NCBI RefSeq assembly: GCF_031769215.1
Contig: NW_026781957.1
Location: 496,001-560,000, forward strand
Source: Ylistrum balloti
Lineage: Eukaryota
Direction: 5' to 3'
Length of the DNA: 64,000 nucleotides
Numbering within the stretch: position 1 is the first letter of the stretch; each line of letters begins with the position of its first letter. A program made the translations under genes and the position numbers. Shown one piece after another: positions 29,538 through 52,098 of the stretch. Under the pieces are notes generated by a model, which saw only the letters and a list, made by a program, of their open reading frames with translations, ran no database searches and was not told where the DNA came from.

Positions 29538-29811
29538 GTAAGTATTTTTCAACTCCACTACAACGTTGATATATATCAACATGCTTGCATTCACGAGACA
29601 ATTAACCGTATTGTTACCGTTAATTAATTACTGATACTTCAAAACTTGGTTTAGAAAATTCAAAAGAATATTATTCGGGGAAAACTTAAAATTTCGACGT
29701 ACATGTATTGGATCTAACAATATTCTAAATGATTACATTGATACAAATAAACAATTATTAAAAACTGATAATCTTATCAAATGAATGATAAAGAATTCTA
29801 TAACTTTCCAG

Positions 29812-31833
29812 TTTTGGAAGAGGAAGACGGCGTCCCTTAAGAAGTACCAGTTACATGTCGCAGTGGCCACCATGTTCATGTTTGTCGTGACCATCGTCGC
29901 TATAGGCTGGCACTTCCATGATCAGTTCCATGAAATATGGAATGCCAACCAGCGAGTCTTCTTCCAGCCGTCTAGTCGAGTTCTTACTCTGAGAGACCCT
30001 GATGATAACAAAATAATGGCGAATCTCGGTGTCAGCATACCCATCTGGCTTCTGCCTTCACACTGCGCAAATGAAAAAGAAACAGGATCGTTCACCTGTC
30101 TAAAATGGAAGAATAATGCGGTATTAAGGATCCGCCACTTCGGATCCAAAAATGTAAATTGTTATAATATAACCTGGGAAGTCCTTCGCGAGGATCTTTT
30201 TCCAGAGGACTGTTTTGTTATAGGTACCAATGTATGGTTCGGACCGTCTAACACATCAAATGCTCTGTGGTCGTTGGACAAAGTTAACTTCACATTTACA
30301 GCTGCAGAGACAGATTTTTATCCAGCCGGGACGTTTAGTTCGGCAATGGAACGGTACTGGATATCCTCGGGAGGAGGTTCCATCTATGTGCATAATGAAG
30401 ATCCGGTGTCTGTCAAATGGAATCTCAAGAATGACAACAAAATATGCTTGGTTGGGAATAACAATGGCAGCTTTTACGGACAGAAGAGAACTAGGGGAAC
30501 AGATCTGAACTATACCGTTTGTCACGGCACAAATCCGGTCACTACACATAAATTCGTACGAAAGTTGTTACCCAAAGGACCAAACAACCTGCCATCCTGG
30601 CGTAGCTTAAAATATCCGGTTTGGTCCACGTTCGGCGTAGCACAATCTTACGACATCACTGACAATGATATTTATGGTTTAGCAAAAGAAATTAACGAAA
30701 GAAACTTGAATTGCAGTTTTATTGAAATTGATGGAAAATGGGAACAACATTTCGGGGATTTAGACTTTGATTCAAAAAGATTTCCTAACATAACAGCTGT
30801 TGTAAAATATGTGAAATCATTAGGTTATTCCCTCTCAGTTGAGGTCAGTCCGTATTTTGGCTATAAATCTATCAATTTTGACGAAGGGATAGATGACGGG
30901 AACTTCATCCTTGATGCAGGAAGAAAAGTTCCAGCGTTCCTTCCCATGCAGAACAGTATTTATGCAATGCTGGACATCACCAACCCATCAGCAGAATCAT
31001 GGATGAAAATGAAAATGATAAGACTTTCTTCTACATACAAGATCACAGCATTCCACATATTTTACCGCAATCGATCATGGATGCCATTTAGTCCATCTTT
31101 CCATGCAGCGGAAGTAACACCAAGTATGATCAGAAACCTTTTTGCAGAACTTGTGACGTCATTTAATGAAGTGGATGCAGATATTGTCGAAGGAACATCG
31201 GGATCACAAAATCAAGTTTCTTTTATAAATATCCCAACCAAGGTAAGCATTCAGTCCGAGGGCGAGTGTATTACTGGTGTCATAGAAACGGCCTTGACTC
31301 TGGGAATTATGGGATATCCATTTGTGATCGTTGACGGAATGTTTGTACAGGAGCCAAATGCAGGTCTTGAAGAGTTCGACTTGCCCAATCGACAGCTGTA
31401 CATTCGATGGATGCAAATGGCGTCCTTCTTTCCGGCAATGAAATTCGCAGTGCCGCCATGGTCTTTTGATGACGAGTGTGTAGAATTAGCGCGGAACGCA
31501 TCAGCACTACACCAGGAATACACTGTCAAAATCATTAACGAAATTCAAAAGGAAATAAAAAATGGAGACCCAATCATTCGACCAATATGGTGGACTGCTC
31601 CATCTGATGAAGAAGCACACAGGGCCAAGAACGAGTTCATGATCGGCGATTCCCTCTTGGTTGCCCCAGTGGTATGTGATCACGTCACGGAACGCCATAT
31701 CTACCTTCCGGAGGGCTTCTGGACCGATATGTTAACGGGAGATTTTATCTACGGGGAGAGATGGCTACTTAACTATGAAGTAAAGATAAACCAAATACCA
31801 CACTTTAAAAGGAAAACTGTCATAGGACACTAG
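29812..31833 (+). CDS. MYORG-like: MYORG-family GH31 type II membrane protein, coding exon 2 (TM plus GH31 domains); apparently catalytically inactive
   Basis: Acceptor ttccag|. TM LHVAVATMFMFVVTIVAIGW. GH31/MYORG motifs: WFGP, ERYWISSGG, PVWSTF, IEIDGKW..FGDLDFD..RFP, LGIMGYPF, YIRWMQMASFFPAMKF..PPW, PIIRPIWW, EFMIGD.LLVAPV, IYLP.G.W. Whole protein ~1106 aa. Confidence 0.93.
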   Translation, partial: FWKRKTASLKKYQLHVAVATMFMFVVTIVAIGWHFHDQFHEIWNANQRVFFQPSSRVLTLRDPDDNKIMANLGVSIPIWLLPSHCANEKETGSFTCLKWKNNAVLRIRHFGSKNVNCYNITWEVLREDLFPEDCFVIGTNVWFGPSNTSNALWSLDKVNFTFTAAETDFYPAGTFSSAMERYWISSGGGSIYVHNEDPVSVKWNLKNDNKICLVGNNNGSFYGQKRTRGTDLNYTVCHGTNPVTTHKFVRKLLPKGPNNLPSWRSLKYPVWSTFGVAQSYDITDNDIYGLAKEINERNLNCSFIEIDGKWEQHFGDLDFDSKRFPNITAVVKYVKSLGYSLSVEVSPYFGYKSINFDEGIDDGNFILDAGRKVPAFLPMQNSIYAMLDITNPSAESWMKMKMIRLSSTYKITAFHIFYRNRSWMPFSPSFHAAEVTPSMIRNLFAELVTSFNEVDADIVEGTSGSQNQVSFINIPTKVSIQSEGECITGVIETALTLGIMGYPFVIVDGMFVQEPNAGLEEFDLPNRQLYIRWMQMASFFPAMKFAVPPWSFDDECVELARNASALHQEYTVKIINEIQKEIKNGDPIIRPIWWTAPSDEEAHRAKNEFMIGDSLLVAPVVCDHVTERHIYLPEGFWTDMLTGDFIYGERWLLNYEVKINQIPHFKRKTVIGH

Positions 31834-36220: not shown

Positions 36221-38416
36221 ACATAAACATCTACCAACTTATGAGCACTCCAGATAACAAGTTGTAATCTACATATTAGCACATTATAGTTGAATGAATC
36301 TCTACCTACTTACATACCTATTTTATCTGAAAACAATAAGTGATTATTTTACTAGTCTACCTAATTAGGTACATCCTTATAAGGTGAATTTCCATTACTT
36401 TAGTCGTTTCCATATTTTACTGACTTCGATGTTACCGCTACAGACAAAATATCTGTATTTACGCCTAAATTAGACTTAATAATTACAATAGCTCTCGCAG
36501 TATAGATGTACAGTGGTCATGGTTATTTATTGTTGTCATGGTAATATGTGTACTTCTTAAACATATATAAAAATACAAACACTCTCATCAAATTTGTGAC
36601 GATACATATATGTATGAACTGTATTCAAATTTATCAAAAAGTTTTTTAAATACATATTGAATACTGCACAAATGGTTTAAAGCCCTCTTCTCTATTGAAG
36701 TTTCATACATCATGTATATAAAATAACCCAGAACTATCTATTTCTCAGAATCTGCAAATATATACCAAGTGTCTAGAATAATTAATATACAAACTTTGTT
36801 CTCATTCAGTGTACATCCTCTGTGATAGTTATACAGTATCAATTCAGTCTATGAAGTTCAAGAACAACAATTAAAGGGTATATCCTACACATATGCTCTC
36901 TTTTCGGTCTAAATGACCTTTACCAATACCAAGTAATTAAAAAGATATTGGTGAATATATAAGTAAAGGTAATTCAAAAATATATACGACATGTCGTAAA
37001 TTGATCTAGTTCAAATGACCCCACCCCCTTTAAAGATATTAAACTCTAACTCCTTTTTTTCGATAAAAAAAATTCCAAAATACATCTTCGACTAAATAAT
37101 ATCCCTCCTTACATGTTTAGTATCTTTTAAAGTAATCAATCTGTCTTTTCTACATAAATATAACTATATACAACATTTTTTTAATAAATCAGTTTCCACT
37201 TAACACGATTGTGCGTGCAATAACGTTCCTCTCTTCATTCGTCCTAACTAAAAACTCACATCATTATTCACACACGACCAAACAGGATTTAAACACTGGC
37301 CTTGTGGGAAATCTTGTACTCCTATACTATACTAAGTACTCGTTAACATTACAATAATAACGGTAGAACTGCTATCTGCTGTAATTGTTTCATTGCTGTA
37401 GAGTGGTTGAACACATCTTTAAGCGAAATTACTAATTTGGTAGAATTTAATGTTTAACAAAGCCCCCAATGATTATTGTTTCTATTCAGCACTAAATCAA
37501 TATCTTGTATCGGACAGACATAGATCAAAGAGAATGGCACCCTTTCTTGTATGACAAACATTAAGGATTGAAATGAAAATGGTATTGTATATTTGACAGA
37601 AATAGAAGTATAAAAGCGAACTCGTAAACACTATTCCTACCGAACTGATGTTTCTGTCTTCTACTTTAATACCACACTCCCGTGTGCATTTGTTTTTATA
37701 TCTCCATTTTACATTAAAAACATCTTATTATCATCGTGTAATTTGCAAAAGAAGCGAAAAAACCTATTGTCTGGTAGAAAAATATAGCTTACATTACAGA
37801 ACATCAAACTTTCAGGGAAACTATCAGGGTTATTCCCCTTGAATACGAAATAAATAAACTAAACATATTTTATACGGCGGTACATTATCTAGAAAAGTGG
37901 AGAAAACTCCTTTGACGTAGATTTATAAAACTGCTATTTGTTCAAGGTTGGAAGACATCTTACATGAAATACAATAGGGATGATATGATGGAACGTTTCA
38001 ATTGTTATTAAAAATGAAGTATGCCAAGAAAACAGGAGGAACAAAGTTCTCAATCTGCTTGATCGTAGATCACATGTAACAGTATAACGAAGACACAATG
38101 TTTACAAAATATAACTGTTTGTATATATCAGATCTGATAATGTATTCACTTCTTTAAAACGCTTTCCTGCATGGCCATTGAAGTTCTGACGTCTGAAGCA
38201 GACTCTGATTATTTTAGGTACGTTATAGGCACCGTTATAAAGCTTAAGTATGGACCCTAACTTGCATAATCATATGGATTCAGAGCTACCTGTTTTAACG
38301 GTAGTGATGGCCTGGTTAAAATCATGCACTTTCACACAAGATCAAGCGGTTAAGGTCGTAGAGCTATTATGCTATGCTACAAACATATTTGGATGAAACT
38401 TTCATGTTGTTCTGTG

Positions 38417-39195
38417 TTACACACGAGATATCTTCTCAACTGACTGTGTCGCCTCCATGGCTGTTTGGTTATACAAACGTTTTTGTTTTTTCTTAAGCGA
38501 CGCAAATTGCGACTTCCGGTCCCGTTCTTGCATTTCCCCGAATGGTGATCCCGGATCTGACATACTGAACACTGGGGAGTCATCATTTAGAGTCACATTG
38601 TTTTCGCACGCTAAAAGATTAAGAAGAGCGTGGTCAGAACCTGTTGGAGAGTTACCAACAGGCGGAGAACCATTTGTCACGTGACTCGTTCCCATTCTTG
38701 GGTAGCCATTTGGCAATTGATATTGTTTTAAATTAGGGATGCCCTCGTCTCTTGGTGGTAACTGTGGACGGTAGTCAGAGGTACTGGATTCCTGCCTCGG
38801 AGACGGCGTATTTGCTACAGTCTCTCTGTTTCTGTACCTAACAGGAGACACATTTCTTCTTTGGTCATTTCGGTTCTGATCGTATCCCTCAGACATTGGA
38901 GTCTGCTGTCTGTACAGCTGTTCACTACTGTTAGACCCTGTAGCCGGGTGTAAGTAGGGGTCAGAGAAAGCTCTGTTCACCTGACCCTTTTGTCCATTAG
39001 AAATAACACCCTTCGATTCACCATTATGTTTTGACACCGGTCCCATATATTTGATGTCAGTATTCATCCCCTGCGGATTGACGAATTGAATGTCAGAAGG
39101 CGGCTTAGTAACGTGACTGACGCCTCCTCCAGAGGGTTCACTGGGCGTGTTGTAGTACCGTTTGAACGGTTTTGATGGACTTGGGCCATCCGATT
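38417..39195 (-). CDS. Tandem-VFT single-pass receptor, exon 7 of 7 (cytoplasmic tail and stop)
   Basis: Acceptor ttttcag| (phase 1), then (E)SDGPSPSKPF…VEKISRV*. Ser/Pro/Asn-rich and disordered, with no further TM segments. Confidence 0.82.
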
Positions 39196-39609
39196 CTGAA
39201 AATGCAAAGAAAATAGTAACCCCAAGTTGGTATGTCACATTAAAACTTCACTTATTGTAAAATGACATTATAATTCACAACTTGTTGAGTTCCTTAAATT
39301 GACGTCCAATTAAAGTGGAACAATTCACCGATGTTTTACTAAATTTGAAAAGTATACACTCTCAATATTTTTATATTTAGCTTTGAAACTTTGATAAAAT
39401 GTCAAGATAAAGTTATCTATACAACATGCACACATGTATACAAAGTTAATATCTAAACTGATAAGCTAACAAAGAAGGGCTGGTATTTCATGTCTCTATG
39501 CAAACATTAAAATCTTAGACTTATACACCTTTTCGTCTCGTTTTAATTGGTTTTGCAACACTATAAACTAACATCATATTTACACATGTAAATATTCCAT
39601 GTAACGTAC

Positions 39610-39898
39610 CTCGTCGTAATTTGCAGAAACAGACAATGACGATGAGTAGGAGGATGATAAGGAGGAGACACGACGATGAAACGACAGCGATGATGATGAT
39701 GGTTGATGTCTGATACTCGGTTACAGGTTGAACTTTTGGCGCTGGTGTCGTCACTTCCGTTGTGGGAGACGTGCTCGACATAAAACATGCACAAGATGAG
39801 ACACATGGAGCAGTTACTTCTTTCTCTGAACCGTCATTGTTGTAAAACTTCATTAAGTTCTTGTTGAGTTCTAGTCGTCCAGGTTTGTAAGTCCCAAC
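39610..39898 (-). CDS. Tandem-VFT single-pass receptor, exon 6 (Cys remnant, Thr-rich stalk, TM)
   Basis: Acceptor gacag| (phase 0), VGTYKPGRLELNK…PCVSSCAC…TSPTTEVTTPAP…TIIIIAVVSSSCLLLIILLLIVIVCFCKLRR, donor G|gtacgt. 289 nt. Confidence 0.87.
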
Positions 39899-40550
39899 CT
39901 GTCAATACATTATCACCCATAATTACGTTACTTAGTGTAACGGCATGAAGACAATGTATACAACATTACTGACTAGATAAAAACATCAACGTGACAACAG
40001 AATCATAATACAAAATATTAAAAAGTCATACGGAACCTCATGAAAAAAGTACAAGGAGAATAAGACCAGCGTTTCGGATGAGTTAGCGTCTTCTGTTCTG
40101 TCGACAAAATGAAGCTAAACCAAAAATTATAACGCTTGTCTTTATAACTTGATATCTGTAAATATATTTTCCAATAGAAACTCTATGTAAATGTTCTGTA
40201 TCGTAACAAATAGACTGAAAAAATGGACCTTGACACAATATCCGAAGGATAAATATCACAAAAATCAGGAATTCGTCAATAAAGGACCTGTGTTGTCTGA
40301 AAAATGGACTCCATTATGTTTAAAGTGCATTTACTGGTGTTATTTTGTGAAAGTAAAATATACAAATAGAGCCCACATTTTCTCACTCTACAAATTGTGG
40401 AAGAGTCCTGTGCTGTTTTGTGGTTTTTAAATTCAAGCTGAAAATGACCGAACAGAAGTAACTTTAGGTGAGGAACATAATTCGACACCTTCATACGAGG
40501 CTGAATTTAGCATATTGATACAAACCATATAAGATTCTAGTAATTCTCAC

Positions 40551-42002
40551 CTCTATATAATCGTATACATCCGGACCAACTGCCTGAAGGTTAAGGATTG
40601 TGAATCCCATATTTCCATTGCGTTCATCGTCAAAGACGGAGAATATTTCGCTCTCCGATCGTAGTACAGCGCCGTTGATTTTTTCCACGATACCCTTTGG
40701 GTGTTCCTTGAGGTAATTACAGCCCCGTAGGTTGTCCTGTGGACATCGGTCCTTCACTCCGTTAAGTCCTAGTCCCAGGGCGTACACTGCATTCATCGTG
40801 TGTATCACTCGTTGGTCATCTACGAAGTTAGATATGTCCTGTTCAGAGAATTGTACGTCCTTGTCACATGTTTTCCCGATCCTTTTATCGAAGTTTCCCT
40901 CGGGATCACACTTAAAATACTCTCTCCAGTATTCTCGATACCATGTATTTGTATCCTCCAAATCCGGCGTTCTATTTTTAAGATAGGTTTCGAATCCGAT
41001 GTCAGCGGATTTTATTTCAAACTTGAAGCTGATAGCCCCTTTAGCGACACTTCCGAGGTTCGACATAATGTTGATACTATCCCCCCAGTCCTCGCTGGCT
41101 AGGAACACAAAATCATACTTTAACGAATTCTGTTTCACTCGTCTTTTCATTTCCGTCAACAGATCGACAATTCTGCCCTCTGTTCCAAAGTATACGATAA
41201 CTTCTTCGCCGTTTTTCTTTATATCTAAAGATATTTGATAGAGCTCGCCCTGATTTCCCGACTCTGAGAGCTCTATAGGATCTGTCACACATATTCCGCT
41301 GGAATTTGCCTTCTCTATGAACAGAGACTTACCTTTGCTCCCATAGTTATTGTTAACGTATATCATACCTACTCGTTTCCAACCCATATGCTCTATAATT
41401 TTAACCATGGCTCCTACTTGTGTGACGTCGCTCGGAACTGTCCTTAAAAAGTAAGGATAATTGATGACGTCATCAAGATCTGGAGACGAAGAAGCGTAAG
41501 ATACGGATGGCAGTTTCAAACGAGTGAAAAGAAGTGTCAATGGGACAGTTACACCACTCGGATAAGGTCCAATCACTCCCAACACCTTTGTAGGGTCGAT
41601 AGTTTCTCCAGCGGGGCCAAACGTTAGTCTACTGCTACCAGACAGAAACTGAGTGACTATCAGACTGCCCACTGTGGAACTGTAACAGTCATCGAAAGCC
41701 AGACCGCCAAATTTGATGCCAGTCATATTCCGAAGTCGGTGTATGGCGTGGAAAAACGATTCCTGAACTATCACATCTACGGAGTAATTTCTAAATTTTC
41801 CACATGAAAATGCATGTTCGTCGTCCAATGGATCATGCATAGAAAACATTCCCAACAACAGCACATCACCATCGACGTATCTGTAAGGTATGGGTGGTAG
41901 GGAAGTACAATTGGAGCAGTTACTAGCACAGGACGAAAGCTGCTGGTGACTGGCGATGAGTGACGAATTTAGTGACAGACTGTTGTTCTTGTAGGTTCCC
42001 AC
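40551..42002 (-). CDS. Tandem-VFT single-pass receptor, exon 5 (linker and entire second Venus flytrap domain)
   Basis: Acceptor ttctccag| and donor GAG|gtgaga, 1452 nt, phase 0/0. mGluR-like motifs: GDVLLLGMFSMH, FDDC, VIGPYPS, VSYASSSPDL.D..YPYFLRTVPSD, MGW..VGMIY..NNYG, ASEDWG, WYREYW..YF.C, AVYALG.GL. Confidence 0.93.
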
Positions 42003-42410
42003 CTGGAGAAGTGAAGAAAGAGTCTGTTAGTCATACATTAGAAAGCAGCCAGCTTACAATAAATATTTTGGTATACATAGAATAACAAACTATCTTATTG
42101 AATGTAATTTACGTTGCTATCACAATTTTTTGGTTATTGGTGGTCAGTATACAAGCTAGAACTTAAATACCGTATAACGGATTTTTTTTCGAGAGGATGC
42201 TATTTTCGCTATTTTGGTGTACATTAAAGTGATTGCGAAAATCGCAGTCCTTGAAATTATGAAACCCTTGTGTATCAGATATCCTTTTACAACTAGATCG
42301 CGAAAGTTTGATTTGTTTGATTCGTTAAAACATAATTCAATCATTGTTTTTAAAAATATCGCGAAAATTCTGACTCGTGTAAATTACCATCAATACAGTA
42401 TATTCGTTGT

Positions 42411-43835
42411 CATCAAACAGCTTGCCTATCATGTCCGCCGAACTAGCACTCAAGCTAGGCAGTATTTAGTCATCATCAAACAGCTTGCCTATCATGTCCG
42501 CCGAACTAGCACTCAAGCTAGGCAGTATTTAGTCATCATCAAACAGCTTGCCTATCACGTCCGCCGAACTAGCACTCAAGCTAGGCAGTATTTAGTTGTC
42601 ATCAAACAACTTGTCTATCATATCCGCCGAACTAGCACTCAAACTAGGCAGTATTTAGTCATCATCAAACAACTTGCCTATCACGTCCGCCGAACTAGCA
42701 CTCAAGCTAGGCAGTATTTAGTCATCATCAAACAACTTGCCCATCATATCCGCCGAAATAGCACTCAAGCTAGGCAGTATTTAGTTGTCATCAAACAACT
42801 TGCCCATCATATCCGCCGAACTACCACTCAAGCTAGTCAGTATTTAGTCATCATCAAACAACTTGCCCATCATATCCGCCGAACTACCACTCAAGCTAGG
42901 CAGTATTTAGTCATCATCAAACAGCTTGCCTATCACGTCCGCCGAACTAGCACTCAAGCTAGGCAGTATTTAGTTGTCATCAAACAACTTGTCTATCATA
43001 TCCGCCGAACTAGCACTCAAACTAGGCAGTATTTAGTCATCATCAAACAACTTGCCTATCACGTCCGCCGAACTAGCACTCAAGCTAGGCAGTATTTAGT
43101 CATCATCAAACAACTTGCCCATCATATCCGCCGAAATAGCACTCAAGCTAGGCAGTATTTAGTTGTCATCAAACAACTTGCCCATCATATCCGCCGAACT
43201 ACCACTCAAGCTAGTCAGTATTTAGTCATCATCAAACAACTTGCCCATCATATCCGCCGAACTACCACTCAAGCTAGGCAGTATTTAGTCATCATCAAAC
43301 AACTTGCCCATCATATCCGCCGAACTAGCACTCAATCTAGGCAGTATTTAGTTGTCATCAAACAACTTGCCCATCATATCCGCCGAACTAGCACTCAAGC
43401 TAGGCAGTATTTAGTTGTCATCAAACAACTTGCCCATCATGACCGCCGAACTAGCACTCAAGCTAGGCAGTATTTAGTTGTCATCAAACAACTTGCCCAT
43501 CATGACCGCCGAACTAGCACTCAAGCTAGGCTGTTTCTAGTCATCATCAAACAACTTGCCTATCACGTCCGTCGAACTACCACTCAAGCTAGGCAGTATT
43601 TAGTTGTCATTAAACAACTTGCCCATCATATCCGCCGAACTACCACTCAAGCTAGGCAGTATTTAGTTGTCATCAAACAACTTGTCTATCATATCCGCCG
43701 AACTACCACTCAAGCTAGGCAGTATTTAGTTGTCATCAAACAACTTGCCCATCATGACCGCCGAACTAGCACTCAAGCTAGGCTGTTTCTAGTCATCATC
43801 AAACAACTTGCCCATCATTACCGCCGAACTAGTAC
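42411..43835. repeat. 63-bp intronic tandem repeat, ~22 copies, with a 378-bp higher-order duplication
   Basis: Unit CATCAAACAGCTTGCCTATCATGTCCGCCGAACTAGCACTCAAGCTAGGCAGTATTTAGTCAT. The same variant block recurs at 42598 and 42976. Lies in intron 4 of the receptor gene. Confidence 0.95.
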
Positions 43836-44230
43836 TAATAGTTGTCATTAAATGTAGGTAAGCGATCACAAGTGTATTTGTGCTGCTAACGAATTTGTGA
43901 CAGCAAAGCTTTTGTTCTGCTGATATTATCTGGACCAGAATAGGCAACAGGTTTCTAACACAGACAAAATATGCACTTTTTCACGTTTTTAGTCTGAGTT
44001 GAGAAATAAATACATCGTTACCTACTGAAGTGTTTAATGTTCGTGGTTTTCCCGTTCATTTCGTGGGTATACTATCAACGAATTGATCACGAACTGTTAA
44101 TTAATATCAGCAGATTAACTGAGTCGTAAAGTCAAGTATCCATAAAATTATTTAAAAAATGATCCCCACAAAATTTTCTGATTCAAAAGTACCTACTGAT
44201 AGTATTTAAACACCATTTTCCAGAACTTAC

Positions 44231-45109
44231 CTTTACAAATGACTTCCTGGTAACATTATACATATTTATATCATAAAGTGGACTTGACCTGTCGGGGAGT
44301 ATGTTACCATGGGAATCGAATCGAACCTGTCGCCCTAAGTCAATAAGTTCCTTAGGTCCGGCAGTGTAGCTTAAATTACTGTAATCCACGCTAGTATTCT
44401 TCATAATGTTAAGGAACTCACTGTCCAAATAACCTTCAAATTTGTCACAAATAACAGTGTAATTTCTACATTTCTTGAACATGGCTTGTTTCAGAGCTGT
44501 CGCGATGACATACACAGCGTCAACGATTGGCATGATAAAGTCGTTTCTCCACTCAATCTTTGTAGTCGGGTTATGCGTCCTGTATTCAGCGATCAGTCTA
44601 TCCACAGAAGATGATGTGTTAGTAACGGTCGACGATGCATCCCACTTCTCCTCAAAAAATTGTCGTGCTTCTTGTATTAACACCGATGACGTCGACACCG
44701 TTATGGTACCGTCAGACACGTGATCAGCGTCATTAAACACCTCAACGCTAGTACCCACAAAGTCAGACATTATCCAGTGAAAGTCTCTATACATTTCATT
44801 GTTATTGAAAAGCTGGTTCAGTCTTATCAACAAAATTTCAATGACGTTCTTTTGACCGAAGTACACGATGCCGAGTTTTCGATCCTTTGCCAAACTCTTC
44901 TGATGTAAGAGAGCTTGAAAAAAGTTCTCGAGTTTGACGATTTCAGCGAAGTTCTCAGTTGCATTTATTGCCTGAACCACGTCAACACATATGCCGTTTT
45001 CTCTAGCCAGTTGTAGTATCTTCTCCATGCCACTTAACCCGTAGTTGTCATTGGTGTGAAGGGCAGCAATGTACGTCCATTTCAAATCCTTTAACAACTG
45101 TATCACCAC
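44231..45109 (-). CDS. Tandem-VFT single-pass receptor, exon 4 (first VFT, main part)
   Basis: Acceptor cctaacag| and donor AAG|gtaagt, 879 nt, phase 0/0. LKWTYIAALHTNDNYG, ICV, WIMSDFVG, VDAVYVIA.AL, RFDSHGN, YDI. Confidence 0.92.
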
Positions 45110-45314
45110 CTGTTAGGAGACAAAGGATATTTCATTATTATCGAGACATTTTCAGCAGGTTAAAATCTCAGATGTTTCTTTACATGCCTTGGCATGTAAT
45201 ATTTTTTAATTCTGTTTAAGTACCATTACAAAAAAAACCACTGACATTGTTTATAACATATCCTTGTTGAAGTGAAATGGATATTTTAGGCAATTGATTG
45301 ATGTCTCTAATTAC

Positions 45315-45469
45315 CTGAACCTGGTCATTGTCAGCTGGGGTTGTTCGGAGAAAGTTCGGAAACTCAGCAAGTTCAGGAAGTGTTGCGAATGGGCTTATCA
45401 CTGGAATGTTACTTCCCAACATTTTTAGCACGTTGTATGTGGTATGACTACGAGATGTTCCGAGAACAC
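45315..45469 (-). CDS. Tandem-VFT single-pass receptor, exon 3
   Basis: Acceptor ttgcag| (phase 1), (G)VLGTSRSHTTYNVLKMLGSNIPVISPFATLPELAEFPNFLRTTPADNDQVQ, donor |gtaatt (phase 0). 155 nt. Confidence 0.9.
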
Positions 45470-45794
45470 CTGCAACAAATATATGTCATTAAATAATATG
45501 TTTACAATTAGTGTTCCGAATGTTGACCCAACAAATTAAGATTAGATATAGCAGAGCCAAATAACAAAGAAGACTGCATCTTACAACTGTTTCTAACCCA
45601 GAAGGCGGAAAATCCAAAGTGATCGAAAGAAATATCAAAATGTAGGTGGAGAGAAAGTCTAAGATAGACTGATATAACTAGACGTTTGATATCATTAAAC
45701 AACCTTCTCATTGAAACAAAAATGACAGTTGGCGTGACACAAGCAAGGAACTTCACAGAGGTAACGTAATGATGGTGTCAATTTAACAACTTAC

Positions 45795-45923
45795 CAAGGA
45801 ACAGTTCGGAATCCCCGTCACCGTAACATTCACGGATATCTTCAGGGAATTTTGTACTCACAGCATCGAGGGCACCAAATGCACTGTATCGTTCTATACC
45901 GCAATCATCATACATATCAAACC
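45795..45923 (-). CDS. Tandem-VFT single-pass receptor, exon 2
   Basis: Acceptor ttttcag| and donor G|gtaagt, 129 nt, phase 1/1, (G)FDMYDDCGIERYSAFGALDAV…ELFL(G). Completes the NINIG-FDMYDDC motif, equivalent to mGluR NITLG.EIRDSC. Confidence 0.88.
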
Positions 45924-46909
45924 CTGAAAAAGAAAAACGTTTGTCAGATTGATCTAATGATTTACGGCACTAAATCCCCTAACCAAGAAAATCGTCAACT
46001 GCCTAACCAACTAGAACACCCAGACACCAGATAGTGATAACACACATCTCTGACCACGTTTATTTACTTCGATGATGTAAAGACTCGTAACAACTGACGA
46101 ACTGCTATGTTCATTAACAAAAAAAAAGGTTGGTTCGCCCTGATTTTTTTTCTTACGTAGATATTTTTGAAAGTTTTATAGGAAAATGATGCCTGGTTCC
46201 AATTCGTGTATATGATTTGGACAATGACATTGCTCTAGCGGTCACTTTTACCAACGACGCCGTTTTGTTTGTTTTGATGTTTATGTCCCCACAACAGGAA
46301 ATGTAATATGAAGACCCAGATGAAAAGTTTACACACGAACACTTCTAAAGTGTCATTACAATGGATTTCATAACCTGGACACAGCCGATAAGCAAGGAGC
46401 ACAAAATACCTCAATGGTTAATGTATGTCACGAGACGTACCCAAAAATCTTCAGCATAGTGACGGACGCTGAACTGACTTTGGGAAAGAGGTCGTTAAGA
46501 AGAGAAAATAAAAAGGTGCCAGGTCCAGACACCGTTAACGATCATACAATCAGGCTAGCGGTGTCTGTTGTTCTGTTGTTTTCGTTCGGGGGTTGGGGGG
46601 GGACACGTGATGAGTGCGATCTGCTCTATCTATTACGTAAGGGATACTAGCTATTTATCCTTTATAGAAAGAAGGTCCTAAATGTGCTCGGACAGAGGGA
46701 TATCTTGTGTTTGACGACCAGTGTGATAAACCAAATCGTCGGACATCACTGTAATGGTACGTAAATAGCAGTTTCTTTTTTATTTTCCTCTGAGTCATAA
46801 TCCTCACAATCACATCATGCGCTGTGTCTGAGCGTGGTAACATTATAGCCTTAGTTACGTAAGTATGTATCTTATGTGCTAATTGATAAACGTGCCACTG
46901 ATTCAACTC

Positions 46910-48880
46910 AGGTATACCAACACACGGGAGAGGTTATACCAACACACGGGACAGGGTATACCAACACACAAAGGAAGGGTATACTAACACACGGGAGAGG
47001 GTATACCAACACACGGGAGAGGGTATACCAACACACGGGAGAGGGTATACCAACACACAAAGGAAGGGTATACCAACACACGGGAGAGGGTAACCAAAAC
47101 TCGGGACAGGGTATACAAACACACGGGACAGGGTATACCAACACACGGGAGAGGGTATACCAACACACAAAGGAAGGGTATACCAACACACGGGAGAGGG
47201 TATACCAACACACAAAGGAAGGGTATACCAACACACAAAGGAAGGGTATACCAACACACGGGAGAGGGTAACCAAAACTCGGGACAGGGTATACAAACAC
47301 ACGGGACAGGGTATACCAACACACGGGAGAGGGTATACCAACACACAAAGGAAGGGTATACCAACACACGGGAGAGGGTATACCAACACACGGGAGAGGG
47401 TATACAAACACACGGGAGAGGGTATACCAACACACGGGAGAGGGTATACCAACACACAAAGGAAGGGTATACCAATACACGGGAGAGGGTATACCAACAC
47501 ACGGGACAGGGTATACCAACACACAAAGGAAAGGGTATACCAACACACGGGAGAGGGTAACCAGCACACGGGACAGGGTATACCAACACACGGGACAGGG
47601 TATACCAACACACGGGTGAGGGTATACAAACACACGGGAGAGGGTATACCAACACACGGGAGAGGGTATACATACACACGAGACAGGGTATACCAACACA
47701 CGGGACAGGGTATACCAACACACGGGTGAGGGTATACCAACACACGGGATAGGGTATACCAACACACGGGAGAGGGTATACCAACACACGGGACAGGGTA
47801 TACCAACACACGGGACAGGGTATACCAACACACGGGAGAGGGTAACCAACACACGGGACAGGGTATATCAACACACGAGACAGGGTATACCAACACACAA
47901 AGGAAAGGGTATACCAACACACGGGAGAGGGTATACCAACACACAAAGGAAAGGGTATACCAACACACGGGAGAGGGTAACCAGCACACGGGACAGGGTA
48001 TACCAACACACGGGACAGGGTATACCAACACACGGGTGAGGGTATACAAACACACGGGATAGGGTATACCAACACACGGGAGAGGGTATACCAACACGGG
48101 ACAGGGTATACCAACACACGGGACAGGGTATACCAACACACGGGTGAGGGTATACCAACACACGGGATAGGGTATACCAACACACGGGAGAGGGTATACC
48201 AACACACGGGACAGGGTATACCAACACACGGGAGAGGGTATACCAACACACGGGACAGGGTATATCAACACACGAGACAGGGTATACCAACACACAAAGG
48301 AAAGGGTATACAACACACGGGAGAGGGTAACCAAAACTCGGGACAGGGTATACAAACACACGGGACAGGGTATACCAACACACAAAGGAAAGGGTATACC
48401 AACACACGAGAGAGGGTATACCAACACACGGGACAGGGTATACCAACACACGGGAGAGGGTATACCAACACACGGGACAGGGTATATCAACACACGAGAC
48501 AGGGTATACCAACACACAAAGGAAAGGGTATACAACACACGGGAGAGGGTAACCAAAACTCGGGACAGGGTATACAAACACACGGGACAGGGTATACCAA
48601 CACACAAAGGAAAGGGTATACCAACACACGAGAGAGGGTATACAAACACACGGGACAGGGTATACAAACACACGGGATAGGGTATACCAACACACGGGAG
48701 AGGGTATACAAACACACGGGATAGGGTATACTAACACACGGGAGAGGGTATACCAACACACGGGATAGGGTATACCAACACACGGGAGAGGGTATACAAA
48801 CACACGGGATAGGGTATACCAACACACGGGAGAGGGTAAACAAACACACGGGATAGGGTATACCAACACACGGGAGAGTT
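46910..48880. repeat. 22-bp minisatellite, ~2 kb (~90 units), intron 1 of the receptor gene
   Basis: Unit GGGTATACCAACACACGGGAGA, with ACA/ATA/TGA and AAAGGAA variants. Source of the VLVYP/CVGIP ORFs. Confidence 0.96.
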
Positions 48881-49754
48881 GTAGGTACCTTAATCCATAC
48901 TGAGCCTCAACAGGCAGTGTTGATAGGTTATACCTTTCTGTATGTATTTTAGTCTATAGAACATTTATTTTCAATTCTAGTAAGTATGAAGTTTATATCA
49001 TTGACATGGATGTCGGTCTAGACATAGAACATCTGTGACAATGATATGTATTCGACCGACTACATCACGGTATAGGTGCGGACGTCCACTTTAACCTTCA
49101 GAATACGAAAGTCACAGTAAGGAATTGAATTAGGGGTATTGTCGTGTGAACATAAAACACGCACAATTTGAGTAAACAATCACGAAGAAATTTCGTGAGT
49201 GGCAGTTTATCATTATTGTATGGTTGTAAAACATTTTAAAGTTACGGTAATGTAGATATTTTAAATACTCTTTGATCTGAAGCGCTGATTGATGTTTTTC
49301 ACTTGTCGGTCATTAAATTTCGCAGTACCCGTAAAAAGTACAATGACCTTTTTCTTTGTTGTGTCGACCTGTGCTGTAAGGGACTCGTGAAAAGAAGTGA
49401 CAACATTTCCGAAGAACTTATGAACCTGATTGAATAGTCAATGGAAGTATTATCCGTCTCGTGTATAGGTCCAAATTGTCCTCTTAATCCACTAGTGAGT
49501 GTCACTGCGGTAGTGTGTATATCTATCAGTCCTGGTAATAATGGAAAAGATAAACACTTAGACAACTATAAATAGAAATAGCAGTGTAGAGATACGTGTG
49601 GTGATTAATTTAACGTTACCCTACCGGAAAATTGATTTTAATCGTTAATGAAATGCACGTGTTTAAACCTCATTTCATGTAATTAGATATATATTTCACC
49701 GCCATCATATAACATCCTATCAAACCGAAACCGATGATGTATGACAAATTATAG

Positions 49755-50530
49755 TCCTGTATGTCGATGTAGTGACAGAACTGAAGTCTTGTTTGTTGAT
49801 GAAGTGACAGAACTGAAGTCTTGTTTGTTGATGTAGTGACAGAACTGAAGTCTTGTTTGTTGATGTAGTGACAGAACTGAAGTCTTAGAGACATAACTGA
49901 AGTCTTGTTTGTCGATGTAGTGACAGAACTGAAGTCTTGTATGTCGTTGTAGTAACAGAACTGAAGTCTTGTATGTCGGTGTAGTGACAGAACTGAAGTC
50001 TTGTTTGTTGACGTAGTGACAGAACTGAAGTCTTGTTTGTTGATGTAGAGACAGAACTGAAGTCTTGTAGAGACAGAACTGAAGTCTTGTTGTAGTGACA
50101 GAACTGAAGTCTTGTTTGTTGATGTAGTGACAGAACTGAAGTCTTGTATGTTGACATAGTGACAGAACTGAAGTCTTGTTTGTTGATGTAGAGACAGAAC
50201 TGAAGTCTTGTTTGTTGATGTAGTGACAGAACTGAAGTCTTGTTTGTTGATGTAGAGACAGAACTGAAGTCTTGTTTGTTGATGTAGTGACAGAACTGAA
50301 GTCTTGTTTGTTGATGTAGAGACAGAACTGAAGTCTTGTATGTGACAGAACTGAAGTCTTGTATGTCGATGTAGTGACAGAACTGAAGTCTTGTTTGTTG
50401 ATGTAGAGACAGAACTGAAGTCTTGTATGTCGATGTAGTGACAGAACTGAAGTCTTGTATGTCGATGTAGTGACAGAACTGAAGTCTTGTTTGTTGATGT
50501 AGAGACAGAACTTAAGTCTTGTTTGTTGAT
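49755..50530. repeat. 32-bp minisatellite, ~24 copies
   Basis: Unit GATGTAGTGACAGAACTGAAGTCTTGTTTGTT, e.g. GTGACAG at 49804 and 49836. Confidence 0.95.
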
Positions 50531-50747
50531 GAGAAGCAGTAGACATGGCGTCATTCTCTTTTTTTCCTATCATAAAAGGTTTTTGTTAAAATTTTCGTTT
50601 ATTCATTTTTGTCATCACTTCATTGATTTTTGAGTGTATGAATTTGTGAACATGTCGGTATTTTCTTTTTCTTAATATTTCGTGTAACAGAGTGTGACAC
50701 CCCAAAGTCTCAATAAATATTACTTATGAATCAATGTTTGCTCATCC

Positions 50748-51490
50748 AGGAAAGACTTCCCAAGGGTCCGACTGTGGAAATAGGAAAGACTTCCCAAGGG
50801 TCCGACTGTGGAAATAGGAAAGACTTCCCAAGGGTCCGACTGTGGAAATAGGAAAGACTTTCCAAGAGTCCGACTGTGGAAATAGGAAAGACTTCCCAAG
50901 GGTCCGACTGTGGAAATAGGAAAGACTTCCCAAGGGTCCAACTGTGGAAATAGGAAAGACTTCCCAAGAGTCCGACTGTGGAAATAGGAAAGACTTCCCA
51001 AGGGTCCGACTGTGGAAATAGGAAAGACTTCCCAAGGGTCCGACTGTGGAAATAGGAAAGACTTCCCAAGGGTCCAACTGTGGAAATAGGAAAGACCTCC
51101 CAAGGGTCCAACTGTGGAAATAGGAAAGACTTCCAGGAAAGACTTCCCAAGGGTCCAACTGTGGAAATAGGAAAGACTTCCAGGAAAGACTTCCCAAGGG
51201 TCCAACTATGGAAAAAGGAAAGACTTCCCAAGGGTCCAACTGTGGAAATAGGAAAGACTTCCAGGAAAAACTTCCCAAGGGTCCAACTGTGGAAATAGGA
51301 AAGACTTCCCAAGGGTTCAACTGTGGAAACGGGAAAGACTTCCCAAGGGTCCGATTGTGGAAATGGGAAAGACTTCTTAAGGGTTCAACTGTGGAAATGA
51401 GAAAGACTTCCAGGAAAGACTTCCCAAGGGTCCAACTGTGGAAATGAGAAAGACTTCTTAAGGGTTCAACTGTGGAAATGAGAAAGACTC
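50748..51490. repeat. 34-bp minisatellite, ~21 copies
   Basis: Unit GGAAAGACTTCCCAAGGGTCCGACTGTGGAAATA, e.g. CAAGGG at 50761 and 50795. Confidence 0.95.
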
Positions 51491-51827
51491 CTTCCAAATC
51501 AATATTATTGAATGAAACGGACAAGTTGGACTAGTTTTTTTTGACTATTTTCTTTGTGTTTAAAATTAAAACACAAATATCCGTCATCCAAGAAGAAGAG
51601 AGGGGGAATGGGGTCGTACAATTGTCTGAAACTCGTTCCCATGTTGATGAAAGGTACCGGTAAAGGGAACTTGTTAGTGCCAATGACAGATACCTTTTCT
51701 TGTCACCACTGGGAGATATAACGTTCGGACACTTATTGATGAGAGGATTAGTGTAGTCGCTGATAAGATACGTGTAATTTACCGTAAAGGGCATTAATTC
51801 GTGTTAATAAGAGAAACAAGAACTTAC

Positions 51828-52098
51828 CAATGTTGATGTTAGGAACATATTTGGCAGCGTTAATTTTGTTGACAGCCCACTGTATTGTTGACATGGTGTG
51901 GAGGGCTCCACTAGAGATTTTGCCACACTCGCCCGTACCCATACTCTGTCGGGTACTCATTATCACAGCGAATATGGCGTTAGCTCCGGTGTTGATCTCG
52001 TAAGGACTTGCCCTGCACTGCTCATGACCTCCGACCATGTACCACAACAAGGTCAGTTGCGAAATCAAGAGAAGTAATTTGATGTATCCTGATGTCAT
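51828..52098 (-). CDS. Tandem-VFT single-pass receptor, exon 1 (signal peptide and start of first VFT)
   Basis: ATG at 52098. Signal-peptide-like MTSGYIKLLLLISQLTLLWYMVGG, then AIFAVIMS…CG…WAVNKINA.KYVPNINIG, donor G|gtaagt (phase 1). 271 nt. The seven exons total 3954 nt = 1317 aa + stop. Confidence 0.88.

What the first reader, a model, noticed from the sequence alone, without database searches (positions are those of the whole stretch)
38417..52098. Receptor with two tandem mGluR-type Venus flytraps, ONE TM helix and no 7TM or cyclase domain
Seen: seven phase-compatible exons give signal peptide, VFT1, a short Cys linker (CASNCSNC), VFT2, a Cys remnant (PCVSSCAC), a Thr-rich stalk, a single TM and a ~260-aa disordered tail ending at a stop. 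No multi-TM exon is visible between 38.4 kb and the GH31 gene. Known: class C GPCR VFTs are normally followed by a nine-Cys domain and a 7TM, and other VFT receptors carry a channel (iGluR) or a kinase-homology/guanylyl cyclase domain. This protein fits none of these. Inference: a G-protein-independent amino-acid sensor, co-receptor/decoy for class C GPCRs, or adhesion-type receptor. Best candidate for an undescribed system in this window.
Basis: partly seen in the sequence, partly recalled or inferred. Interest (0 to 1): 0.86.

Follow-up and report, generated by a model that had tools for sequence, protein, structure and literature searches.

The report
Single-pass receptor with two flytraps
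This scallop gene encodes a membrane protein with two glutamate-receptor-type "flytrap" ligand-binding domains in a row, one membrane helix and a docking tail, but no G-protein-coupling or enzyme part. It belongs to a conserved, unstudied family in molluscs, brachiopods and bryozoans that split off from giant multi-flytrap class C receptors.

Summary
Seven GT-AG exons on the minus strand (52098-38417) give a 1317-aa type I membrane protein. It is identical to NCBI's model "uncharacterized protein LOC132543434" of Ylistrum balloti. It has a signal peptide, two ANF_receptor/VFT domains (nearest solved structures: mGluR5/1/7), two short three-Cys linkers, one TM helix and a 263-aa disordered tail. 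No 7tm_3, NCD3G, kinase, cyclase or channel domain is found, and nothing 7TM-like is encoded anywhere in the 64 kb.

It is not a one-off. About 50 cluster representatives from bivalves, gastropods, a brachiopod and a bryozoan share the architecture, all uncharacterised or auto-named "mGluR5".

A domain tree and shared intron positions show that the family is a paralogue of equally undescribed poly-VFT class C GPCRs (3-5 VFTs plus 7TM). It has kept their VFT1 and one middle-VFT cassette exon.

Both pockets keep the α-amino-acid recognition residues, and VFT1 keeps the inter-protomer disulfide Cys. The tail is as conserved as the VFTs and ends in an invariant -ISRV PDZ ligand.

Best reading: a dimeric amino-acid-binding receptor that works without G proteins, through adaptor and scaffold docking. 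That function is inferred, not shown. No RNA data for this species were available.

The parts
51828..52098 (-). Exon 1: start codon, signal peptide (aa 1-24, 52027-52098) and the start of VFT1
   Evidence: ATG at 52098 and a GTAAGT donor after 51828. Hydrophobic N-terminus; the AF2 model shows a helix at 2-25 followed by a low-pLDDT break.
45795..45923 (-). Exon 2: VFT1 lobe-1 segment with the loop cysteine C123 (IRECYG, 45820-45837)
   Evidence: AG/GT sites, phase 1-1. C123 aligns with the inter-protomer disulfide Cys loop of mGluR7 and of an mGluR-like receptor, and with V1 of the poly-VFT GPCRs. It is conserved in 33 of 46 family members.
45315..45469 (-). Exon 3: VFT1 segment holding S141 and T163 (equivalents of mGluR1 S165 and T188) and D180 (D208)
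   Evidence: Pfam ANF_receptor hit on this ORF; alignment to mGluR7; family conservation 34-36 of 46.
44231..45109 (-). Exon 4: the rest of VFT1 (to aa 478), with Y208, D301 and F376
   Evidence: Pfam ANF_receptor E 9.8e-20.
40551..42002 (-). Exon 5: a phase 0-0 cassette exon encoding linker 1 (CASNCSNC, 41907-41930) plus the whole of VFT2 (aa 516-962, 40551-41891)
   Evidence: Pfam ANF_receptor E 1.2e-40; mGluR5 is the best solved relative at 1.8e-42. The equivalent exon boundaries occur in the Argopecten 5xVFT-7TM gene.
39610..39898 (-). Exon 6: post-VFT2 beta segment, PCVSSCAC (39785-39808), Thr/Pro stalk (39704-39778), TM helix aa 1029-1054 (39623-39700) and KLRR stop-transfer
   Evidence: AF2 gives a helix at 1026-1059 and pLDDT below 50 for 1001-1024.
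38417..39195 (-). Exon 7: cytoplasmic tail with conserved short motifs YYN (39143-39163 region), IQFVN (39074-39091), GQVNRAF (38966-38986) and RPQLPPR (38750-38770), the C-terminal -ISRV (38420-38431) and the stop codon (38417-38419)
   Evidence: Tail alignment A1 of 12 orthologues, motif scan across the family, region-wise identity, coordinates.

Best explanation
The locus encodes a genuine type I, single-pass receptor that carries class C-type ligand-binding domains but has no 7TM. It belongs to a conserved lophotrochozoan family that arose from a poly-VFT class C GPCR gene. The new gene kept the N-terminal VFT (V1) and one 'middle' VFT cassette exon, and the remaining VFTs and the 7TM were replaced by a stalk/TM exon and a tail exon. 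The proposed mechanism is inferred. The protein dimerises through VFT1, which keeps the class C inter-protomer disulfide cysteine. Each VFT binds an alpha-amino acid or close derivative. VFT2 of this orthologue group has an Arg at the position of the mGluR side-chain-carboxylate Lys, which suggests an acidic ligand, while VFT1 has an aromatic residue there. Flytrap closure then re-orients the two TM helices and tails, as in natriuretic-peptide receptors and Venus kinase receptors. Output does not go through G proteins or a built-in enzyme. It goes through proteins docked on the disordered tail: a class I PDZ scaffold on the invariant C-terminal -ISRV, an SH3 protein on RPxLPPR, and possibly SH2/PTB adaptors on YxN and the two Asn-centred motifs.
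For: Shown by tool results:
- The gene model has seven GT-AG exons and is identical to NCBI's prediction.
- Pfam gives 2x ANF_receptor only, and nothing 7tm_3-like is encoded in the window.
- Contigs from relatives (4.9 and 6.0 kb) carry uninterrupted 1317-aa ORFs with in-frame upstream stops and 3' UTRs, so the messages end after the tail.
- About 50 representatives share the 2 VFT + 1 TM layout. Named members come from bivalves, gastropods, Lingula and Watersipora.
- In the careful domain tree, family VFT1 is one clade (90/85), sister to V1 of lophotrochozoan 5xVFT-7TM receptors (99/93) and then to deuterostome V1 (99/93). Family VFT2 is one clade (91/73), sister to V2-V4 (93/91) and then V5 (93/84).
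- The exon ends at aa 90, 133, 185, 478 and 962 map onto exon ends at about 93, 130, 188, 478 and 955 of the Argopecten 5xVFT-7TM gene.
- The same three-Cys linker follows every VFT in the poly-VFT receptors.
- Pocket residues, named from mGluR1 per PMC2680970: VFT1 has S141, T163, D180, Y208, D301; VFT2 has S627, S650, D670, Y698, E782. VFT2 residues are conserved in 41-46 of 46 members (counting S/T at 650 and E/D at 782); VFT1 residues in 34-36 of 46, and D/E at 301 in 38 of 46.
- The AF2 model has pLDDT 86.4 with both VFTs well folded. TM-score normalised to the target is 0.88 against the glutamate-bound mGluR5 LBD.
- Among scallop genera the tail is 86-87% identical, the same as the VFTs (82-87%), while the stalk is 56%.
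- -ISRV is invariant from the protobranch Solemya to Haliotis, and RPxLPPR, YxN, FxN and GxVNxAF recur.
From established knowledge: X-S/T-X-V-COOH is a class I PDZ ligand, PxxPxR is a class II SH3 ligand, and pYxN is the Grb2 SH2 consensus.
Against: - No ligand, partner, expression site or dimer has been observed for any member.
- No RNA reads of this species were available.
- Short linear motifs in disordered tails are easy to over-read, and only -ISRV and FxN extend beyond the closest orthologue group.
- Several family members have very short tails (20-100 aa) without these motifs. Tail-based signalling therefore cannot be the family-wide mechanism.
- The relative orientation of the two VFTs is not robustly predicted. 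pTM is 0.66, and AFDB tandem-VFT models superpose with rmsd 9-25 Å.
- In VFT1 the recognition residues are replaced in about a quarter of members.
Confidence: 0.55

Rival explanations
1. Auxiliary subunit or decoy. The protein has no output of its own. It heterodimerises through VFT1 with the poly-VFT class C GPCR of the same animal, adding or competing for ligand-binding sites and tethering the complex to PDZ scaffolds. This would be a GABA-B1/B2-like division of labour taken to the point where one partner has lost its 7TM.
For: VFT1 is the orthologue of V1 of the poly-VFT GPCRs, and both keep the loop cysteine used for inter-protomer disulfides in class C receptors. Genera or close relatives that have the 1TM protein also have a 5xVFT-7TM receptor, for example Argopecten, Sinanodonta and Bulinus. 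Family members with very short tails fit a passive partner better than a signalling receptor.
Against: VFT1 of the two families has diverged deeply (about 20-25% identity, long branches). The long tail is under constraint as strong as the VFTs in this orthologue group, which is more than a tether needs. No interaction data exist.
Confidence: 0.2
2. Adhesion or synaptic-organiser protein. The VFTs act as protein-protein interaction modules, like the amino-terminal domains of ionotropic glutamate receptors, and the PDZ-binding tail anchors the protein at junctions or synapses. Small-molecule binding would be vestigial.
For: The layout is a single pass, a glycosylated ectodomain (14 N-x-S/T sites), a mucin-like stalk, and a C-terminal S-x-V PDZ ligand resembling those of neuroligin-type adhesion proteins (own knowledge). 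No enzymatic or G-protein module is present.
Against: The five alpha-amino-acid recognition residues are kept in both pockets across three phyla. In VFT2 they are nearly invariant, for example Y698 in 46/46 and S627 in 44/46. That is hard to explain if the pockets were unused.
Confidence: 0.12
3. Clearance or buffering receptor. Like NPR-C for natriuretic peptides, it binds extracellular amino acids or transmitters and internalises them, shaping local concentrations rather than signalling.
For: The overall plan (VFT ectodomain + 1 TM + non-enzymatic tail) matches NPR-C, and the Atlas feature search lists NPR3-type clusters among its look-alikes. The Asn-centred FxN(P) motif is loosely similar to FxNPxY endocytosis signals (own knowledge).
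Against: The VFTs are mGluR-type, not NPR-type. The FxNP motif lacks the tyrosine in most members. Transporters already clear amino acids far more efficiently. The PDZ and SH3 ligands point to scaffolding.
Confidence: 0.08
4. Annotation artefact. The gene would be a normal class C GPCR whose 7TM exons were missed, or a decaying truncated pseudogene.
For: No RNA reads for this species could be laid.
Against: - No 7TM coding potential exists in the window, and the downstream neighbour is a convergent gene.
- Contigs from relatives have uninterrupted ORFs ending at the same -ISRV stop.
- The stop position and C-terminus are conserved across bivalves and gastropods.
- The ORF is intact in a second individual's DNA, where all four indels lie in introns.
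- The tail is as conserved as the VFTs.
Confidence: 0.03

Closest known systems
Metabotropic glutamate receptors (class C GPCRs, mGluR1/5/7)
   Same: Both VFTs are mGluR-type by sequence (mGluR5 1.8e-42 for VFT2, mGluR7 2.7e-23 for VFT1) and by fold (TM-score normalised to the target 0.88 against 3lmk). The five alpha-amino-acid recognition residues and, in VFT1, the inter-protomer Cys loop are kept.
   Different: There are two VFTs in one chain, no nine-Cys NCD3G domain and no 7tm_3. One TM helix and a long adaptor-motif tail take their place.
Poly-VFT class C GPCRs (3-5 ANF_receptor domains + 7tm_3; uncharacterised predictions in Argopecten, Sinanodonta, Physella, Tubulanus, Octopus, Saccoglossus, Anneissia, Branchiostoma)
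   Same: These are the nearest relatives. V1 is orthologous. VFT2 is sister to their middle VFTs. The three-Cys linker after each VFT is the same, and so are the intron positions through V1 and the V2 cassette exon.
   Different: They carry three to five VFTs and a 7tm_3 domain. This family stops after two VFTs and has a single TM and its own tail.
NPR-C / NPR3 (natriuretic peptide clearance receptor)
   Same: An ANF_receptor-fold ectodomain, a single TM, a non-enzymatic cytoplasmic tail and a disulfide-linked dimer (own knowledge). It is the precedent for a VFT receptor without a catalytic or 7TM module.
   Different: NPR-C has one VFT of the NPR subtype that binds a peptide at the dimer interface, and a 37-aa tail. 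Here there are two mGluR-type VFTs with amino-acid-type pockets and a 263-aa tail with PDZ and SH3 ligands.
Venus kinase receptors (VKR) of insects and flatworms
   Same: A VFT linked through a single TM to the cytoplasm. They form dimers and are activated by amino acids such as L-Arg (PMC2680970).
   Different: VKRs have one GABA-B-like VFT and an insulin-receptor-like tyrosine kinase domain. No kinase domain is present here.
BvgS/EvgS bacterial sensor kinases
   Same: Two VFT domains in tandem on the extracytoplasmic side, followed by one TM helix (PMC4352136, seen).
   Different: These are bacterial and their VFTs are of a different periplasmic-binding-protein type. They have a cytoplasmic PAS-histidine kinase. 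The resemblance is by analogy, not shown homology of the arrangement.

Membership tests
Class C (family 3) GPCR | Extracellular ANF_receptor/VFT domain | tested here: met
   Two ANF_receptor domains, E 2.9e-76. mGluR structures are the top sequence and fold matches.
Class C (family 3) GPCR | 7tm_3 heptahelical domain | tested here: not met
   No 7tm_3 hit in Pfam. One hydrophobic helix only. No 7TM-like coding sequence in the 64 kb by tblastn.
Class C (family 3) GPCR | Nine-cysteine NCD3G domain between the VFT and the membrane (mGluR/CaSR/T1R branch) | tested here: not met
   No NCD3G hit. Only three conserved Cys (C994, C998, C1000) follow VFT2.
Lophotrochozoan 2xVFT single-pass family (defined here) | Signal peptide, VFT1, three-Cys linker, VFT2, three-Cys motif, stalk and one TM at about aa 980-1090 | tested here: met
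   The layout is shared by 54 proteins (about 50 distinct cluster representatives). The Cys at positions 503/507/510 and 994/998/1000 are conserved in 44-45 of 46. VFT1 and VFT2 each form one clade.
Lophotrochozoan 2xVFT single-pass family (defined here) | C-terminal -ISRV of the orthologue group | tested here: met
   The protein ends in EKISRV, as in Pecten, Argopecten, unionids, Solemya, Saccostrea and Haliotis.
Poly-VFT class C GPCR lineage | Orthologous N-terminal VFT and shared exon-intron structure | tested here: met
   The V1 clade has support 99/93. Five exon boundaries coincide with the Argopecten 5xVFT-7TM gene.
Poly-VFT class C GPCR lineage | Three or more VFTs followed by 7tm_3 | tested here: not met
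   Two VFTs and no 7tm_3.
Natriuretic peptide receptor family (NPR-A/B/C) | NPR-type VFT. For NPR-A/B also a kinase-homology and a guanylyl cyclase domain | tested here: not met
   The top 60 solved relatives of each VFT are mGluR, CaSR or T1R, with no NPR chains among them. No Pkinase or Guanylate_cyc hit.
Venus kinase receptor | Intracellular tyrosine kinase domain | tested here: not met
   No Pfam domain in aa 1055-1317. The tail is rich in S, P, N and G and contains no Pfam domain, which fits disorder; the AF2 model ended at residue 1060, so its structure was not predicted.
Ionotropic glutamate receptor | Lig_chan / SBP_bac_3 ligand-binding core and pore | tested here: not met
   No such Pfam hits.
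Amino-acid-binding VFT (8-residue motif of Acher and Bertrand, as cited in PMC2680970) | Equivalents of mGluR1 S165, T188, D208, Y236 and D318 | tested here: met
   VFT1 has S141, T163, D180, Y208, D301. VFT2 has S627, S650, D670, Y698, E782, with conservative T-to-S and D-to-E changes. Actual binding is not testable with these tools.

The most novel reading that the evidence does not exclude
The 2xVFT single-pass proteins are a new class of metazoan neurotransmitter or nutrient receptor. They would be covalent dimers that read two different amino-acid-type ligands (one per flytrap) and transmit across the membrane without a G protein, channel or enzyme, by ligand-controlled assembly of PDZ, SH3 and SH2 adaptor complexes on a disordered tail. 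Together with the parental poly-VFT GPCRs, they would show that class C flytraps can work as chained, combinatorial sensors and not only as one-per-protomer dimers.
Probability: 0.25. Interest if true: 0.85.

Novelty: new variant of a known kind. Interest (0 to 1): 0.6.

Why it matters
Class C receptor biology is built on one flytrap per protomer coupled to a 7TM bundle. A recent survey of class C ectodomains lists no tandem-ANF architecture (PMC12716839).

This locus shows that a conserved branch of the family has dropped the 7TM altogether while keeping two ligand pockets under selection. Its parent lineage of 3-5-flytrap GPCRs is widespread in bilaterians, including hemichordates, crinoids and amphioxus, and is also unstudied.

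If the pockets bind amino acids, these proteins would be a G-protein-independent route for glutamate or amino-acid sensing in molluscan nervous or chemosensory tissue. Aplysia has a member. They would also be a natural experiment on how flytrap closure is transmitted through a single helix.

On the practical side, several members are mis-annotated as "metabotropic glutamate receptor 5" or "GRM4". This can mislead transcriptome studies in shellfish.

Tried and rejected
- RNA evidence. The look-up of sequencing runs returned a single run, which read laying showed to be genomic DNA: its contigs are colinear across introns at depth about 10. The exon 6-7 junction therefore could not be checked with reads. 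The run did show that the ORF is intact in another individual.
- Missing 7TM exons. Hydropathy of all minus- and plus-strand ORFs between 26 and 38.4 kb, and tblastn of six 7TM domains against the whole window, found nothing.
- Multi-domain giants P0004 and P0005 (8-10 VFT stretches). These are fused gene models of tandem CASR-like genes in Polypterus, not real architectures.
- Literature. Six full-text searches for tandem, double or multiple VFT/ANF receptors found only the bacterial BvgS/EvgS and canonical class C work. An oyster 'mGluR5' paper gives no domain description.
- Profile-based search for homologous proteins with alignment A2. It added almost no new named taxa because of the word prefilter. 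I could not ask about annelids, nemerteans or phoronids directly.
- Intramolecular pseudo-dimer of VFT1 and VFT2. AFDB tandem-VFT models disagree on the inter-domain arrangement.
- Homology of the single TM helix with TM1 of the poly-VFT GPCRs. The sequences are only generically hydrophobic, so this stays undecided.
- The search of earlier findings by words found nothing on VFT receptors elsewhere in this genome.

Full report
**1. What is in the sequence**

The region holds a minus-strand gene. I read the open frames and the junction sequences, then assembled seven exons: 52098-51828, 45923-45795, 45469-45315, 45109-44231, 42002-40551, 39898-39610 and 39195-38417. Every exon is bounded by AG...GT, and the phases fit.

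The product is 1317 aa. It is identical, residue for residue, to P0152, NCBI's "uncharacterized protein LOC132543434 [Ylistrum balloti]". The window therefore comes from Ballot's saucer scallop, and an independent pipeline reached the same model.

Pfam finds two ANF_receptor domains (and the overlapping Peripla_BP_6) and nothing else. Hydropathy gives one helix at 1029-1054, followed by KLRR. The stalk (1003-1027) is Thr/Pro-rich. The 263-aa tail is rich in S, P, N and G.

**2. Is a 7TM hiding somewhere?**

On the minus strand between the stop codon and the convergent plus-strand ORF at 28.2-31.8 kb there is no ORF with more than one hydrophobic segment. tblastn of six class C 7TM domains, including that of the Argopecten poly-VFT receptor, against all 64 kb gave nothing better than E 0.9. 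A VFT control from the same Argopecten receptor found exon 5 at 6e-47.

The one sequencing run offered was genomic DNA. No RNA evidence exists here for this species. In that second individual, all four indels in the 6 kb examined fall in introns, and the five exonic differences are two synonymous and three missense changes.

In relatives, Logan contigs L001 (4917 nt) and L002 (5994 nt) carry uninterrupted 1317-aa ORFs. Each has an in-frame stop upstream and 204-455 nt of 3' UTR. Since the scallop gene has six introns, these are most simply transcript assemblies, and they end after the tail. The run type itself I could not check.

**3. It is a family**

An exhaustive HMMER scan with exon 5 found 4659 relatives. 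Among the best 150, plus hits of later searches, 54 proteins (about 50 distinct cluster representatives) have two VFT matches and exactly one late hydrophobic helix at aa 980-1090.

Named members are:
- Scallops: Pecten, Argopecten, and Mizuhopecten (the last labelled "Metabotropic glutamate receptor 5").
- Oysters, Pinctada, unionids and the protobranch Solemya.
- Gastropods: Haliotis, Patella, Littorina, Batillaria, Bulinus, Nucella, Aplysia and Plakobranchus.
- The brachiopod Lingula and the bryozoan Watersipora.

The ESM Atlas has a 105-member mollusc cluster with ANF_receptor only. AFDB fold clusters hold tandem-VFT models with automatic names only.

**4. Where it came from**

The same scan turned up proteins of 1800-2900 aa with three to five VFTs followed by a 7tm_3 domain. 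Pfam on P0002 gives 5x ANF_receptor + 7tm_3 and no NCD3G. They occur in a nemertean, bivalves (including Argopecten), gastropods, Octopus, Saccoglossus, a crinoid and amphioxus, and all are uncharacterised.

A maximum-likelihood tree of 76 individual VFTs (quick; careful, LG+G4, ultrafast bootstrap / SH-aLRT) gives these placements:
- Family VFT1 is one clade (90/85). It is sister to the first VFT of the lophotrochozoan 5xVFT receptors (99/93), and then to the first VFT of the deuterostome ones (99/93).
- Family VFT2 is one clade (91/73). It is sister to their VFT2-4 (93/91), and then to VFT5 (93/84).

Gene structure agrees. The scallop exon ends at aa 90, 133, 185, 478 and 962 align to exon ends at about 93, 130, 188, 478 and 955 in the Argopecten 5xVFT-7TM gene (L003). 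In both genes V1 is split by the same introns, and the next VFT, with its preceding linker, is one phase 0-0 exon of about 1.45 kb.

Every VFT of the poly-VFT receptors is followed by the same "VGxY...L.L...C-x3-5-C-x2-C" module.

V1-bearing 7TM receptors exist in deuterostomes, while the 1TM form was seen only in lophotrochozoans. The simplest history is loss of the distal VFTs and the 7TM in a duplicated gene. The direction of that change is an inference.

**5. Clues to mechanism**

*Ligand pockets.* PMC2680970 names the mGluR1 residues that hold the alpha-amino-acid moiety (S165, T188, D208, Y236, D318) and K409, which holds glutamate's side-chain carboxylate. HMMER alignments to mGluR5 and mGluR7 place these equivalents:

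| mGluR1 | VFT1 | VFT2 |
|---|---|---|
| S165 | S141 | S627 |
| T188 | T163 | S650 |
| D208 | D180 | D670 |
| Y236 | Y208 | Y698 |
| D318 | D301 | E782 |
| K409 | F376 | R876 |

Across 46 family ectodomains (alignment A2), the VFT2 positions are nearly fixed: S 44, S/T 44, D 41, Y 46, E/D 45. The VFT1 positions are kept in about three quarters of members. The K409 position is aromatic in VFT1 (Y/F 34) and R/K (23) or W (11) in VFT2. Both pockets therefore look functional, and they look different from each other.

*Dimerisation.* VFT1 has a Cys (C123) in the disordered lobe-1 loop, next to the position of the mGluR inter-protomer disulfide Cys. It is shared with V1 of the poly-VFT receptors. 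VFT2 has none.

*Fold.* AlphaFold2 with A2 gives pLDDT 86.4 and pTM 0.66, two complete flytraps, a structured linker, a disordered stalk and a TM helix. Foldseek's best solved matches are mGluR5/1/3 ligand-binding domains (TM-score normalised to the target up to 0.88).

*Tail.* Among scallop genera the tail is 86-87% identical, the same as the VFTs, against 56% for the stalk. Twelve orthologues from Solemya to Haliotis share:
- Y-x-N.
- Φ-x-F-x-N(P).
- G-x-V-N-x-A-F.
- R-P-x-L-P-P-R.
- An invariant C-terminal I-S-R-V, with one I-S-Q-V.

Other paralogue groups also mostly end in S/T-x-Φ or Φ-x-Φ. By established consensus rules these are a class I PDZ ligand, a class II SH3 ligand and a potential Grb2-type SH2 site. 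None of this was tested.

**6. Reading**

The shown facts are the architecture, the family, its origin and the conservation pattern. The inferred mechanism is a VFT1-linked dimer whose two kinds of pocket bind amino-acid-type ligands. It would transmit closure through the single helix to a scaffold- and adaptor-docking tail. NPR-C and the Venus kinase receptors are precedents for VFT-to-single-helix coupling.

Three rivals cannot be excluded without experiments: an auxiliary or decoy partner of the poly-VFT GPCR, an adhesion or organiser protein, and a clearance receptor. An annotation artefact is very unlikely.

**7. Novelty**

Six full-text searches found no description of eukaryotic tandem-VFT receptors. 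A 2025 survey lists only ANF+NCD3G, ANF alone and Cache+EGF for metazoan class C receptors. The proteins themselves are already in public databases as unnamed predictions.

I therefore class this as a new variant of a known kind (VFT receptors). It is of solid but not exceptional interest until a ligand or partner is found.

Noticed in passing
P0002, P0003, P0006, P0007, P0010, P0011, P0013, P0014, P0016, P0020, P0028; L003:1001-22599: These are class C GPCRs with three to five tandem VFT domains before a 7tm_3 domain (1800-2900 aa). They lack NCD3G. They occur in nemertean, bivalve, gastropod, cephalopod, hemichordate, crinoid and amphioxus genomes, all uncharacterised. In Argopecten the middle and last VFTs are mostly single cassette exons. 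I found no paper describing this architecture.
   Followed up: partly
window 42410-43836, 46911-48878, 49735-50532, 50748-51489: Large minisatellite arrays fill introns 1 and 4 of the gene: 63 nt x 22.7 copies, 22 nt x 89 copies, 32/64 nt x about 21 copies and 34 nt x about 11 copies. They produce long spurious ORFs on both strands.
   Followed up: no
window 28215-31830 (+): The downstream neighbour is a convergent plus-strand gene with long ORFs at 28215-29624 and 29785-31830. Earlier notes of this scan call it a MYORG-like GH31 pseudo-glycosidase with PP1-docking repeats. I used it only as the boundary for the 7TM search.
   Followed up: no
P0153 (Mizuhopecten), P0056 (Plakobranchus), AFDB K1RH28 and A0A6J8APV8: Members of this 7TM-less family are labelled 'Metabotropic glutamate receptor 5' or 'GRM4' in public records. 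This is an annotation error that could contaminate mGluR expression studies in shellfish.
   Followed up: partly
P0004, P0005 (Polypterus senegalus): These 3171-aa and 3927-aa 'CASR protein, partial' entries have 8-10 VFT matches and scattered TM clusters. They are fused gene models of tandem CaSR/OlfC-like genes, not true multi-VFT proteins.
   Followed up: partly
window 38300-42463: A second individual's DNA contigs (run X1) differ by about 25 SNPs and 4 intronic indels over 4.2 kb. One indel is a 9-nt insertion 14 nt upstream of the exon 7 acceptor (after 39209). The exonic changes are V1122G, G922D, Q862R and two synonymous ones.
   Followed up: partly
P0026 / P0168 (Haliotis rubra isoforms X1/X2): The abalone orthologue has two predicted isoforms, of 1424 and 1346 aa. 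Both end in -SRISRV, which suggests alternative splicing within the protein.
   Followed up: no
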